A stretch of 64,000 bases of DNA from Macrostomum lignano (lineage: Eukaryota): contig NIVC01002611.1 in the NCBI GenBank assembly GCA_002269645.1, positions 62,001 through 126,000 of the forward strand. The letters are read 5' to 3'. Shown here in pieces: positions 28,802-29,830 of this stretch (position 1 is its first letter; each line of letters begins with the position of its first letter). Below the pieces are notes generated by a model. It was not told the origin of the DNA. It worked only from the letters and a program-made list of their open reading frames with translations, and made no database searches. A program made the translations under genes and the position numbers.

Positions 28802-29830
28802 GTAGTCGGCGGGAGTAACTATACTTTTAATTTATTTGATAAATACTTCGTCATACACTTAGTTTTCGTACAAACTATCAAGGATATAATAGTCCATAGT
28901 AGAAAAGTTGAGGCAGTCATAAGGAGTAACTATAGCTTTATCTAGCTTGTAAACGATAAATAACCTCCACACAGTTAGTGTAGGAGCAAATGACAATAAC
29001 AAATCGAATCAAGGACTACCAAAAACTTTTCTATTCCAGCTGTCGGTGGTCCCTAATTAAATTAGGACTTATTTTCCACCTCTGCGCAGAGTGCGATTCG
29101 TTAGTCTTTGCTTTTCAGGCAGTCAGCAGGAGTAACTAATAACCTCATTTCGATACCTCTGCCATCCAAACACGTGCACAGATGGAGCACTTGGGCAGTC
29201 CGCGCGAATTCCCCTACTTTGGCCGGCCTGACTATAGCGCTAAAAATCTGTTCAAGTTCAGCTGCTCCAGCCAGTACGAATGCGGCTACCGCCAATCGAG
29301 CGAGTTGTGCTATCACAGCTCGAAAGTCCTGGCGCTGGCCAAGGACAACCCGTCCAGCCTGCTGCTCACGAGACCCACCGATGCGGCCATTGTGTGCGCC
29401 TGACACTGCAATTACCTAGGCTCAGCCATGCGGCTGCAGGATTGTAATTGAGAGCATGACAATAAAAATATATTAATGAGTAACGTCCTTTATCAATTGT
29501 TGCTTTTAGGTAGTCGGCGGGAGTAACTATAACTTCATTCTTATAGCTAAATGCCTCGTCATACAACCAGTTAGAAAGCGAAGCCGGCTATAAATTTAAA
29601 CACAGCTGTTAGTAGTCCATGATCGAAAATAGAAATCTATATGTAGGTAGTCATGAGAAGTAACTATAAATTTCTTTAGCTCGTAAAAGGTAAATTACAA
29701 TGCAATTACATTAACAATTGCAGTACCTGCTCAGCAATTGCGGCAGCAGGATTTTATTTGAGAGTATGGCAATAAAAGCCTATGAATTAATGATTAGCGT
29801 CGAATATATTGCTGTTTGATTGTTTATCAA
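28802..29830 (+). repeat. Degenerate ~310-390-bp tandem units carrying five copies of a 28S rRNA helix 69-71-like motif
   Basis: Copies start at 28802, 28913, 29119, 29510 and 29647. The copy at 29510-29562 matches the recalled 28S consensus GTAAACGGCGGGAGTAACTATGACTCTCTTAAGGTAGCCAAATGCCTCGTCAT at 42/53 positions without gaps. Confidence 0.8.
29182..29403 (+). CDS. Secreted Cys-rich protein B, exon 2
   Basis: GCACAG|MEHLGSPREFPYFGRPDYSAKNLFKFSCSSQYECGY...AIVCA-TGA; AATAAA at 29461; 159 aa in total. Confidence 0.72.
   Translation: MEHLGSPREFPYFGRPDYSAKNLFKFSCSSQYECGYRQSSELCYHSSKVLALAKDNPSSLLLTRPTDAAIVCA

What the first reader, a model, noticed from the sequence alone, without database searches (positions are those of the whole stretch)
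28802..29830. Array of 28S rRNA helix 69-71 (R2/I-PpoI target) mimics scrambled at the cleavage site
Seen: five related motifs start at 28802, 28913, 29119, 29510 and 29647. The best copy (29510-29562) keeps CGGCGGGAGTAACTAT and AAATGCCTCGTCAT exactly, with the native 18-nt spacing (42/53 identity, no gaps, to the 28S consensus as recalled). Seven of its 11 mismatches fall inside the CTCTTAAGG core. The 28802 copy also keeps 18-nt spacing but has a different core. The motifs sit in ~310-390-bp degenerate units that share further blocks (TAGTCCAT..GAAAA; GAG(C/T)ATG(A/G)CAATAA; TTGCTTTT(C)AG). Established: CTCTCTTAAGGTAGC is the site of R2 retrotransposon insertion and I-PpoI cleavage, and helix 69 is a core ribosomal element. 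No other rDNA is present. Inference: a 28S-derived short mobile or tandem element, footprints of repeated cut-and-repair by an rDNA-specific endonuclease at ectopic targets, or an rRNA-mimic/antisense small-RNA source.
Basis: partly seen in the sequence, partly recalled or inferred. Interest (0 to 1): 0.82.

Follow-up and report, generated by a model that had tools for sequence, protein, structure and literature searches.

The report
Locally repeated, decayed 28S rDNA fragment
A roughly 65-base piece copied from the large-subunit ribosomal RNA gene sits, in five decaying copies, inside a small local tandem repeat that forms the intron and downstream flank of a flatworm-specific gene; it looks like captured ribosomal DNA (one copy now supplies the intron's splice donor), not a working ribosome mimic.

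Summary
The window is Macrostomum lignano (flatworm) DNA. Five same-strand motifs, AG|GYAGTC-N5-GRAGTAACTA, lie at the stated coordinates. The best copy (29509-29571) is significantly similar to real eukaryotic 28S (E about 1e-7): exact 16-mer and 14-mer at native spacing, 42/53 identity, and mismatches clustered just 5' of the R2 nick (scan P about 5e-4). Only copies 1 and 4 are detectably 28S-like. Nothing else in 64 kb is rDNA.

The motifs head three tandem units of about 320-390 bp. These units make up the single intron, exon 2 with its 3'UTR, and the 3' flank of an orphan two-exon gene (BOX15_Mlig011527g1). Copy 1 starts exactly at the intron's GT donor.

The whole array also exists at a 97%-identical homeologous locus. 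There, copy 2 is deleted and copy 3 is mutated inside the motif, so those copies are not constrained. I found no conserved RNA fold on either strand, no snoRNA boxes, no R2 or reverse-transcriptase remnant, and no other copies in accessible data. The scrambled centre is largely shared between copies, so it is ancestral, not repeated damage.

Best reading: a captured 28S fragment, locally duplicated and decaying. The unevenly distributed mismatches remain unexplained. Genome-wide copy number could not be tested.

The parts
28544..28801 (+). Exon 1 of BOX15_Mlig011527g1 (signal-peptide-like N-terminus, 86 codons)
   Evidence: My spliced translation is 100% identical to NCBI protein PAA56518.1. 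The gene call in L001 spans 860 nt, which is 28544-29403. All 8 differences from the homeolog are synonymous.
28802..29181 (+). The gene's only intron (380 nt), GT...AG. It contains head copies 1, 2 and 3.
   Evidence: Follows from the splice model that reproduces the annotated protein. Donor and acceptor are conserved in L002.
29182..29403 (+). Exon 2 (73 codons plus TGA)
   Evidence: It differs from the homeolog at 2 sites (1 synonymous, 1 Ser to Asn).
28800..28864 (+). Head copy 1 (w1). The 28S-like stretch is 28801-28863. Its GT at 28802-28803 is the intron's 5' splice donor.
   Evidence: 43/65 identity to the 28S consensus. BLASTN hits 28801-28822 or 28801-28863. It matches copy 4 at 78% over 65 nt, and the first 22 nt of U1 and U3 are identical.
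28911..28964 (+). Head copy 2 (w2), a decayed internal duplicate of the head
   Evidence: 80% identical to copy 5 over 54 nt. 26/65 identity to 28S, which is not significant. Deleted or damaged in homeolog L002.
29117..29149 (+). Head copy 3 (w3), directly after the acceptor-like TTGCTTTTCAG
   Evidence: Its centre agrees with copy 4 at 13/18 positions. GGAGTAACTAA has become GGAG-GACTAA in L002.
29508..29572 (+). Head copy 4 (w4), the best 28S-like copy. The 28S-derived stretch is 29509-29571.
   Evidence: Exact 16-mer and 14-mer, native spacing, E about 1e-7 to 2e-8. The 28S-like stretch is identical in L002 except one T to A at window 29573, just past it.
29645..29698 (+). Head copy 5 (w5), a decayed internal duplicate
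   Evidence: Identical in L002.
28802..29118 (+). Unit U1 (317 bp): head 1, TAGTCCAT block, head 2, decayed tail, TTGCTTTTCAG
   Evidence: About 66-68% identity to U3, with many gaps.
29119..29509 (+). Unit U2 (391 bp): head 3, 63 nt, exon 2, 3'UTR tail with AATAAA (29461-29466), TTGCTTTTAG
   Evidence: The tail 29413-29487 is about 79% identical to the U3 tail 29724-29801.
29510..29850 (+). Unit U3 (about 320-340 bp): head 4, TAGTCCAT block, head 5, tail with AATAAA (29771-29776). It lies downstream of the gene.
   Evidence: 96% identical to L002 10940-11287.

Best explanation
It is a relic, not a device. A fragment of about 65 bp of the nuclear 28S rRNA gene (helices 68/69 to 71, roughly -35 to +30 around the R2 insertion point) was captured once at a non-rDNA site in a Macrostomum ancestor. 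How it was captured is inferred: filler DNA at a repaired break, or reverse-transcriptase template switching onto rRNA.

The fragment then became the head of a unit of about 320 bp. That unit was duplicated internally (head 1 and head 2) and then tandemly, giving three units. This happened long before the two M. lignano homeologs separated. The copies have since decayed at different rates.

The repeat now overlaps an orphan, selectively maintained two-exon gene. Unit 1 plus the start of unit 2 is its intron. Unit 2 carries exon 2 and the 3'UTR. Unit 3 lies past the poly(A) signal.

The only copy with a demonstrable role is copy 1. Its GT is the intron's 5' splice donor, in AGGTAGTC, the stretch that aligns with 28S GGGTAAAC. 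The adjacent G-run (GGCGGG) may help a weak donor; that part is inference.

Shown: 28S derivation, local unit structure, age relative to the homeologs, lack of constraint on copies 2 and 3, and use of the donor.

Inferred: the capture mechanism, and the cause of the extra divergence in the 13 nt just 5' of the R2 nick. That divergence arose mostly once, in the common ancestor of copies 1, 3 and 4.
For: - Species and gene.
- 28S derivation: BLASTN against 120 real 28S contigs hits only 29509-29571 (all 120 contigs) and 28801-28863. The rest of the units, the window and the homeolog locus have no rDNA similarity. There is no Rfam hit.
- Unit structure.
- The whole array is present at a second locus (L002, contig NIVC01000087.1) at 97% identity, so it is not an assembly artefact and predates the homeolog split. 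U1 and U3 are only about 67% identical, so the unit duplication is much older.
- No constraint on copies 2 and 3: L002 has lost 27 nt at copy 2 and changed the conserved core of copy 3. The intron's substitution rate (0.045) is not lower than that of the flanks (0.018-0.031).
- Donor use: the predicted splice reproduces the annotated protein exactly. All 8 exon-1 differences between the homeologs are synonymous, and 3 of them lie in the last 75 nt before 28802.
- No functional-RNA signature on either strand.
- No transposon protein remnant in six frames of 25000-29950.
- No other copies in the window, in L002, in predicted proteins that read through the motif, or in metagenome and viral collections.
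- The centre of copy 3 agrees with that of copy 4 at 13/18 positions with shared derived states, so the scrambling is ancestral and not repeated.
Against: Decay is not uniform.
- In copy 4 the two flanks are perfect (30/30), while the 18-nt centre is 9/18 (scan P about 5e-4).
- The diverged block ends exactly at the R2 nick, and TAGCTAAATGCCTCGTCAT is 18/19 from position +1.
- Copies 1 and 4 share an unbroken 22-nt identity although their units are only about 67% identical. My run-length estimate n(1-p)p^k gives about 0.02.
- The conserved flanks are GC-rich in an AT-rich setting.

These points hint at constraint, gene conversion or a special origin, none of which simple neutral decay explains. 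Genome-wide copy number, transcription and small RNAs could not be examined.
Confidence: 0.55

Rival explanations
1. Scar of a single rDNA-specific endonuclease or retrotransposon event. The source 28S copy, or the newly captured ectopic target, was cut once at the R2/I-PpoI site and repaired imprecisely (abortive target-primed reverse transcription, or error-prone or templated repair). That left both protein-binding flanks intact and the 13 nt 5' of the nick scrambled. Alternatively, only copies with a destroyed core survived because intact ectopic targets attract R2 insertions.
For: - The mismatch block abuts the documented bottom-strand nick AAGG|TAGC. Identity is 18/19 downstream, 5/13 immediately upstream, and 16/16 further upstream.
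- The clustering is significant and largely ancestral.
- The centre of copy 4 contains a 6-bp inverted copy of the adjacent CTATAA (the stem). Templated snap-back repair can leave this.
- R2 elements occur in Platyhelminthes (PMC13188248).
Against: - Length is conserved exactly (18 nt in copies 1 and 4), whereas end-joining scars usually change length.
- No R2, reverse-transcriptase or endonuclease remnant in any frame within 5 kb.
- No M. lignano R2 is on record in the material I could read.
- The centre/flank split was chosen after seeing the data.
- A 6-bp inverted repeat in AT-rich sequence is weak evidence.
Confidence: 0.13
2. Cis-acting splicing element. The head (AG|GYAGTC ... GRAGTAACTA) is kept because it works as a 5' splice site with a downstream intronic enhancer. 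The junctions YAG|GYAGTC at 29118/29119 and 29509/29510 would act as recursive or alternative splice sites, or as trans-splice acceptors in this species, which uses a spliced leader.
For: - Copy 1 is the annotated donor.
- All five heads are preceded by AG.
- Copies 3 and 4 follow TTGCTTTTCAG and TTGCTTTTAG, which fit the M. lignano acceptor motif [T/C]TNCAG (PMC8629364).
- Two blocks, AGGYAGTC and GRAGTAACTA, are kept in all five window copies while the 5 nt between them vary.
- The first 22 nt of units U1 and U3 (copies 1 and 4) are identical.
Against: - GTAGT departs from the species' donor consensus GT[G/A]AG.
- The intron is only 380 nt, so recursion is not needed.
- Copies 4 and 5 lie beyond the AATAAA signal.
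- Copies 2 and 3 are lost or mutated in the homeolog.
- No RNA data were available.
Confidence: 0.12
3. Member of a dispersed non-autonomous mobile family (SINE-like, introner-like, or a chimeric retrocopy) whose 5' module derives from 28S. The local array would come from repeated insertion or unequal crossing-over.
For: - The units are intron-like: they start with GT, end with a pyrimidine tract plus AG, and carry AATAAA near the 3' end.
- U2 has the layout rRNA piece, then coding segment, then 3'UTR with poly(A) signal. This resembles template-switch chimeric retrogenes (my recollection of that literature, not tested).
Against: - No copy outside the array in 64 kb plus 20.8 kb.
- No inverted terminal repeats: all heads are on one strand.
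- No target-site duplication or poly(A) tail seen.
- No read-through copies among predicted proteins.
- No paper linking introners to Macrostomum.
Confidence: 0.1
4. Minus-strand guide RNA. The reverse strand would encode a C/D-box-snoRNA-like or other antisense RNA, pairing with 28S at CGGCGGGAGUAACUAU and AAAUGCCUCGUCAU.
For: - The minus strand of copy 4 reads GGUUGU-AUGACGA-...-CCGA-CUACC. That gives box-like elements one mismatch from the C (RUGAUGA) and D (CUGA) consensus and a 5/6 terminal stem (by eye).
- A weak Rfam hit to a fungal C/D snoRNA at E = 1.8.
- A 5-bp UAGUU/GACUA stem is kept in all copies, with U-A changed to U-G only on this strand.
Against: - The hit scores 17.7 bits against a gathering score of 39, and nothing reaches gathering score.
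- CUGA is present in only 1 of 5 copies, and the C-like box in 2 of 5.
- Complementarity runs straight through the supposed boxes, as expected for a plain antisense 28S copy.
- Fold z-scores are not significant, and there is no two-sided covariation.
- Native 28S spacing between two independent guides would be a coincidence.
Confidence: 0.03

Closest known systems
rDNA orphons / dispersed rRNA-gene pseudogene fragments
   Same: A short stretch of nuclear 28S sequence lies outside any rDNA array, is decaying, and no ribosomal function is apparent.
   Different: It is only about 65 nt long, sits at the head of a local tandem unit, one copy is used as a splice donor, and its divergence is concentrated next to the R2 site.
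Spliceosomal introns created from captured filler DNA (break-repair insertions, organelle-DNA-derived introns)
   Same: Foreign, non-intronic DNA supplies intron sequence and a splice signal. Here the donor GT lies within the 28S-aligned stretch (28S GGGTAAAC, window AGGTAGTC).
   Different: I could not show that the intron is a gain, because no intron-less orthologue is available; the gene is known only from M. lignano. The comparison rests on my knowledge of that literature.
R2 retrotransposon / I-PpoI target site in 28S
   Same: The fragment spans the target, with both flanking stretches of it kept exactly in copy 4. The diverged block ends at the R2 nick.
   Different: The 15-bp core CTCTCTTAAGGTAGC is not intact in any copy. 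Nothing is inserted at the site, and there are no element remnants nearby.
Template-switch chimeric retrogenes (small RNA or rRNA 5' part fused to an mRNA 3' part)
   Same: Unit 2 reads 28S-like head, then coding segment, then 3'UTR with AATAAA.
   Different: There is no poly(A) tail or target-site duplication. The other units lack the coding part. The head also occurs twice within a unit.
Recursive splice sites (ratchet points)
   Same: There are juxtaposed acceptor and donor sequences, TTGCTTTTCAG|GCAGTC and TTGCTTTTAG|GTAGTC.
   Different: Known ratchet points serve very long introns. This intron is 380 nt, and one of the junctions lies beyond the poly(A) signal.
Box C/D snoRNAs guiding 2'-O-methylation around helix 69-71
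   Same: The minus strand is complementary to a heavily modified 28S region.
   Different: The boxes are not canonical or conserved, complementarity is not bounded by the boxes, and there is no Rfam support.

Membership tests
Functional 28S rRNA gene / rDNA unit | Matches the eukaryotic LSU rRNA covariance model at gathering score | tested here: not met
   No Rfam hit at gathering score in 64 kb. No LSU hit at E <= 10 in 28300-30000.
Functional 28S rRNA gene / rDNA unit | Collinear homology extending beyond the fragment (rest of 28S, 5.8S, 18S) | tested here: not met
   BLASTN against 120 rDNA contigs hits only 29509-29571 and 28801-28863.
rDNA-derived orphon fragment | Statistically significant similarity to nuclear rRNA, located outside an rDNA array | tested here: met
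   E = 2e-8 to 8e-7 against all 120 contigs. The surroundings are a protein-coding gene and minisatellites.
rDNA-derived orphon fragment | No selective constraint (neutral decay) | tested here: inconclusive
   Copies 2 and 3 decay freely in the homeolog. However, the flanks of copy 4 and the 22 nt shared by copies 1 and 4 are better kept than expected.
R2 (or other 28S-specific non-LTR) insertion or remnant | Element sequence inserted between AAGG and TAGCC | tested here: not met
   Native 18-nt spacing with no inserted sequence.
R2 (or other 28S-specific non-LTR) insertion or remnant | Reverse transcriptase or endonuclease coding remnants nearby | tested here: not met
   No Pfam family in six frames of 25000-29950.
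I-PpoI / R2 cleavable target site | Intact CTCTCTTAAGGTAGC core | tested here: not met
   In the CTCTTAAGG core, 7 of 9 positions are mismatched in copy 4, and no copy is intact.
Box C/D snoRNA (minus strand) | Canonical C (RUGAUGA) and D (CUGA) boxes conserved among copies, with a terminal stem | tested here: not met
   AUGACGA occurs in 2 of 5 copies and CUGA in 1 of 5 (by eye). The only Rfam hit scores 17.7 bits against a cut-off of 39.
Structured non-coding RNA (either strand) | Fold more stable than shuffles, or covariation supporting a consensus structure | tested here: not met
   z-scores from -1.4 to +1.1. Consensus energies are -0.09 and -1.5 kcal/mol, with no supported two-sided covariation.
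Dispersed mobile element (SINE / MITE / introner) | Many dispersed copies with defined termini, terminal inverted repeats or target-site duplications | tested here: inconclusive
   No copy outside the array in 84.8 kb and no inverted repeats. The genome-wide test was not possible with these tools.
Recursive splice site | Juxtaposed 3' and 5' splice-site consensus inside a long intron, with RNA evidence for intermediates | tested here: inconclusive
   The sequence juxtaposition is present at 29118/29119 and 29509/29510. The intron is only 380 nt, and RNA evidence is not available.
Spliceosomal 5' splice donor (copy 1) | GT at the exon-intron boundary that yields the annotated, conserved reading frame | tested here: met
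   The splice 28801|28802 ... 29181|29182 reproduces PAA56518.1 exactly. All 8 exon-1 differences from the homeolog are synonymous. The donor is conserved in L002.

The most novel reading that the evidence does not exclude
The architecture of two perfect 28S flanks around a length-preserved scrambled block that ends exactly at the R2 nick is not an accident of decay. Under this reading it records one ancient hit by an rDNA-specific endonuclease or retrotransposon on an ectopic or pre-capture 28S target, or selection for a cleavage-resistant target copy. The surviving flanks are then maintained because the head now acts in splicing of the host gene.
Probability: 0.12. Interest if true: 0.55.

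Novelty: new member of a known kind. Interest (0 to 1): 0.3.

Why it matters
If the main reading holds, this is a small, clean example of ribosomal DNA captured outside the rDNA array and partly put to use: a GT within the 28S-aligned stretch serves as the splice donor of a lineage-specific gene that is under purifying selection. It adds to how introns and young genes are assembled in the repeat-rich M. lignano genome. It does not reveal a new ribosome-mimic or anti-R2 system. The one point that could raise its value is the uneven divergence pattern next to the R2 nick. A genome-wide and cross-species comparison could settle that quickly.

Tried and rejected
1. Rfam on the whole window and, permissively, on the locus: nothing relevant.

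2. Search for other loci through predicted proteins that read through the motif (the VVGGSNY... frame): only the gene itself and its short isoform came back.

3. Exact scans for the element-specific 22-mer in metagenome contigs, and for a 19-mer variant in viral contigs: 0 hits each.

4. Homology between the exons and the non-coding units, and between exon 1 and exon 2. There is no significant DNA similarity beyond one 11-mer, and no protein similarity. I therefore dropped the idea that units 1 and 3 are decayed exon copies.

5. A helix-69-like hairpin on the + strand. A GGAG/CUUY stem can be drawn by eye in every copy, but RNAalifold does not recover it and the fold energies are ordinary.

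6. C/D snoRNA on the minus strand: rejected for the reasons given under rivals.

7. A sixth head at 29853 (AG|GTCACG...GGCGCGGGT): it does not score in the weight-matrix scan.

8. Pfam on the gene product. There is no domain, although UniProt labels it 'SUEL-type lectin domain-containing'.

9. Literature searches for introners in Macrostomum, for rRNA-like sequences in introns, and for R2 in flatworms gave background only.

10. Protein P0002 (the UniProt isoform from the older assembly) has no contig on record, so a third locus could not be compared.
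Full report
WHERE THIS IS. The window is nuclear DNA of the free-living flatworm Macrostomum lignano, contig NIVC01002611.1 of assembly GCA_002269645.1. 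I joined 28544-28801 to 29182-29403, and the translation is 100% identical to NCBI protein PAA56518.1 (BOX15_Mlig011527g1, 159 aa). The window is packed with unrelated minisatellites. On the minus strand at about 6.4-10.9 kb it carries a protein-kinase gene.

- Five motifs of the form AG|GYAGTC-N5-GRAGTAACTA(T)A start at 28802, 28913, 29119, 29510 and 29647, all on the + strand. The 10-mer GRAGTAACTA is expected 0.19 times by chance. A weight-matrix scan of both strands finds no further copy in 64 kb.
- For a real 28S reference I fetched 120 metagenome contigs that contain the exact 45-nt core. The consensus of 66 of them equals the published R2 target oligonucleotide (PMC13000458).
- Against it, copy 4 keeps CGGCGGGAGTAACTAT and AAATGCCTCGTCAT exactly at the native 18-nt distance. 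Identity is 42/53 over 29510-29562 and 49/65 over the whole alignable stretch 29509-29573. Seven mismatches lie inside CTCTTAAGG.
- BLASTN with word size 7 gives E = 2e-8 to 7e-8 against every one of the 120 contigs.
- The clustering of mismatches is itself beyond chance within this copy: scan statistic P about 5e-4, and two exact runs of at least 16 and 14 at P about 2e-3.
- Copy 1 is the same fragment with more decay (43/65). Copies 2, 3 and 5 retain little more than GGAGTAACTA and are not significantly 28S-like on their own.
- Nothing else in the window or in the homeologous locus resembles rDNA.

ANATOMY. The motifs are the heads of three tandem units.
- U1 is 28802-29118.
- U2 is 29119-29509.
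- U3 is 29510 to about 29850.
- U1 and U3 are collinear: head 1, a TAGTCCAT...GAAAA block, a second decayed head, then a tail with an AATAAA-like block. They are about 66-68% identical, with many gaps.
- U2 has a head, then 63 nt, then the GC-rich exon 2, then a 3'UTR tail (AATAAA at 29461-29466). That tail is about 79% identical to the tail of U3.
- U1 and U2 end in acceptor-like TTGCTTTTCAG and TTGCTTTTAG. Every head is preceded by AG.
- The gene's only intron is 28802-29181, so copy 1 begins exactly at the GT donor.

The donor is supported beyond the annotation. Between the two homeologs, all eight exon-1 differences are synonymous. Three of them lie in the 75 nt between an alternative upstream donor (used in an older UniProt model, P0002) and 28802, so that stretch is coding. 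Exon 2 has one synonymous and one Ser-to-Asn change. The gene is therefore real and under purifying selection, although it has no Pfam domain and no relatives outside M. lignano.

THE HOMEOLOG TEST. Protein PAA91452.1 led to a second locus (L002, contig NIVC01000087.1) that carries the whole arrangement at 97% identity. The array is therefore genuine and older than the homeolog split.
- Copies 4 and 5 are unchanged.
- Copy 1 has two changes, one of which restores AAATACCTCGTCAT.
- At copy 2, L002 lacks 27 nt, and the motif is lost or heavily altered.
- In copy 3, GGAGTAACTAA has become GGAG-GACTAA.

Substitutions per site are 0.045 in the intron, against 0.018-0.031 in the flanks, the exon-1 silent sites and U3. 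The motif copies inside the intron are thus not protected. With only about 3% divergence, the unchanged state of copies 4 and 5 says little.

TESTS OF FUNCTIONAL READINGS.
- Folding 71-nt windows around each head on both strands gives z-scores from -1.4 to +1.1.
- RNAalifold finds no consensus structure on the + strand (-0.09 kcal/mol). On the minus strand it finds only a 5-bp UAGUU/GACUA stem (-1.5 kcal/mol) without two-sided covariation.
- The minus strand of copy 4 can be read as a miniature C/D RNA (AUGACGA ... CCGA with a terminal stem). But the boxes are off-consensus and not conserved among copies, complementarity to 28S runs through them, and Rfam gives only a 17.7-bit chance-level hit against a cut-off of 39.
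- No reverse transcriptase, endonuclease or transposase remnant appears in any of six frames of 25000-29950.
- No other copies turned up in proteins that read through the motif, in metagenome contigs or in viral contigs.

THE SCRAMBLED CENTRE. The published nick position is AAGG|TAGCC. Relative to it, copy 4 is 18/19 identical downstream (TAGCTAAATGCCTCGTCAT), 5/13 in the 13 nt immediately upstream, and 16/16 further upstream.

The pattern is not independent damage in each copy. The 18-nt centres of copies 3 and 4 agree at 13/18 positions and share six states that differ from 28S. Copy 1 shares four of these six, and two of the six (A at position 1, T at position 5) are present in all five copies (with by-eye comparison). 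Most of the change therefore happened once, before the unit duplications, while the flanks were still intact.

Length is preserved exactly, which is unlike typical end-joining scars. A single early event at the R2/I-PpoI site, survivorship of a cleavage-resistant copy, or later constraint on the flanks all remain possible. None of them is demonstrated.

Two further oddities point the same way:
- The first 22 nt of units U1 and U3 (heads 1 and 4) are identical although the units are about 67% identical. My run-length estimate puts this at about 0.02.
- The conserved flanks are GC-rich in an AT-rich context.

For copy 1 a plausible reason is its donor role, with the G-run as an intronic enhancer (inference). 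For copy 4, which lies about 45 nt past the poly(A) signal, I have no tested reason.

VERDICT. The most economical account is a captured 28S fragment that became the head of a locally duplicated unit and is now decaying, with one copy co-opted as a splice donor (confidence about 0.55). The rivals are a single endonuclease or retrotransposon scar (0.13), a splicing cis-element (0.12), a dispersed mobile family (0.10) and a minus-strand guide RNA (0.03).

The claim of an 'array of helix 69-71 mimics' is not supported as a functional statement. 'Repeated cut-and-repair' is contradicted by the shared ancestral centre. The finding is a new example of a known kind of thing, with one unexplained statistical feature. 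The decisive test could not be run with the tools available: a genome-wide and cross-species search for the head and the unit.

Noticed in passing
window 28544-29403 vs L002 10001-10833: The host gene is known only from M. lignano, and Pfam finds no domain in it. Even so, it differs from its homeolog by 9 synonymous and 1 non-synonymous changes, so a lineage-specific secreted-looking protein is under purifying selection. UniProt calls it 'SUEL-type lectin domain-containing', and calls a shorter isoform 'Oocyte maturation factor Mos'. Pfam supports neither name.
   Followed up: partly
window 29983-31518 (also L002 from about 11440): A 30-bp minisatellite (51 copies, 96% matches) starts about 130 bp after unit U3. 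On the + strand it keeps an open frame encoding the decapeptide repeat ILKEKRIESQ, but the minus strand has an even longer ORF. In the homeolog the array is less regular. I do not know whether it is coding.
   Followed up: no
window 36428-38204 and 39004-41030: This is a tandem segmental duplication of about 2.6 kb. Identical 35-bp arrays (9.8 copies, 99% matches) are each followed by a 23-bp array (ATTCCGCCCCTGTCAGCCAAGCC, 45 and 56 copies). A third array of the same 23-bp unit lies at 35271-35628.
   Followed up: no
window 1-64000: More than 25 unrelated minisatellite arrays (units of 15-72 bp, up to 72 copies, for example 19715-22887) occupy a large share of the window. Several produce long spurious ORFs in multiple frames.
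   Followed up: no
window 6401-10872, minus strand: A multi-exon protein-kinase gene: Pkinase at E = 8e-31 for 10438-10872, with the C-terminal part of the domain at 8619-9557. By eye it looks STE20/TAO-like, with coiled-coil C-terminal exons. Minisatellites (25-bp and 26/28-bp units) sit in its introns.
   Followed up: partly
window 28714-28724, 29413-29426 and 29723-29733: The 11-mer ACCTGCTCAGC in exon 1 recurs in the tail of U3, and in altered form (ACCTAGGCTCAGCC) in the 3'UTR tail of U2. In the first two cases it lies about 90-100 nt before the next head (88 and 97 nt). This hints that the end of exon 1 and the unit tails share ancestry, which would mean an old duplication of an exon-plus-intron cassette. 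Statistically it is marginal (P about 0.02 before multiple-test correction).
   Followed up: partly
window 29528-29546: The diverged centre of copy 4 forms a perfect 6-bp inverted repeat with the adjacent 28S-derived bases (CTATAA ... TTATAG). This is compatible with a templated snap-back repair insertion, but also with chance in AT-rich sequence.
   Followed up: partly
window about 25000-25450: Six-frame translations show near-identical peptide strings on opposite strands (...FIFXYDLP...). This indicates an inverted repeat of a few hundred bp, possibly a foldback or MITE-like element, about 3.5 kb upstream of the gene.
   Followed up: no
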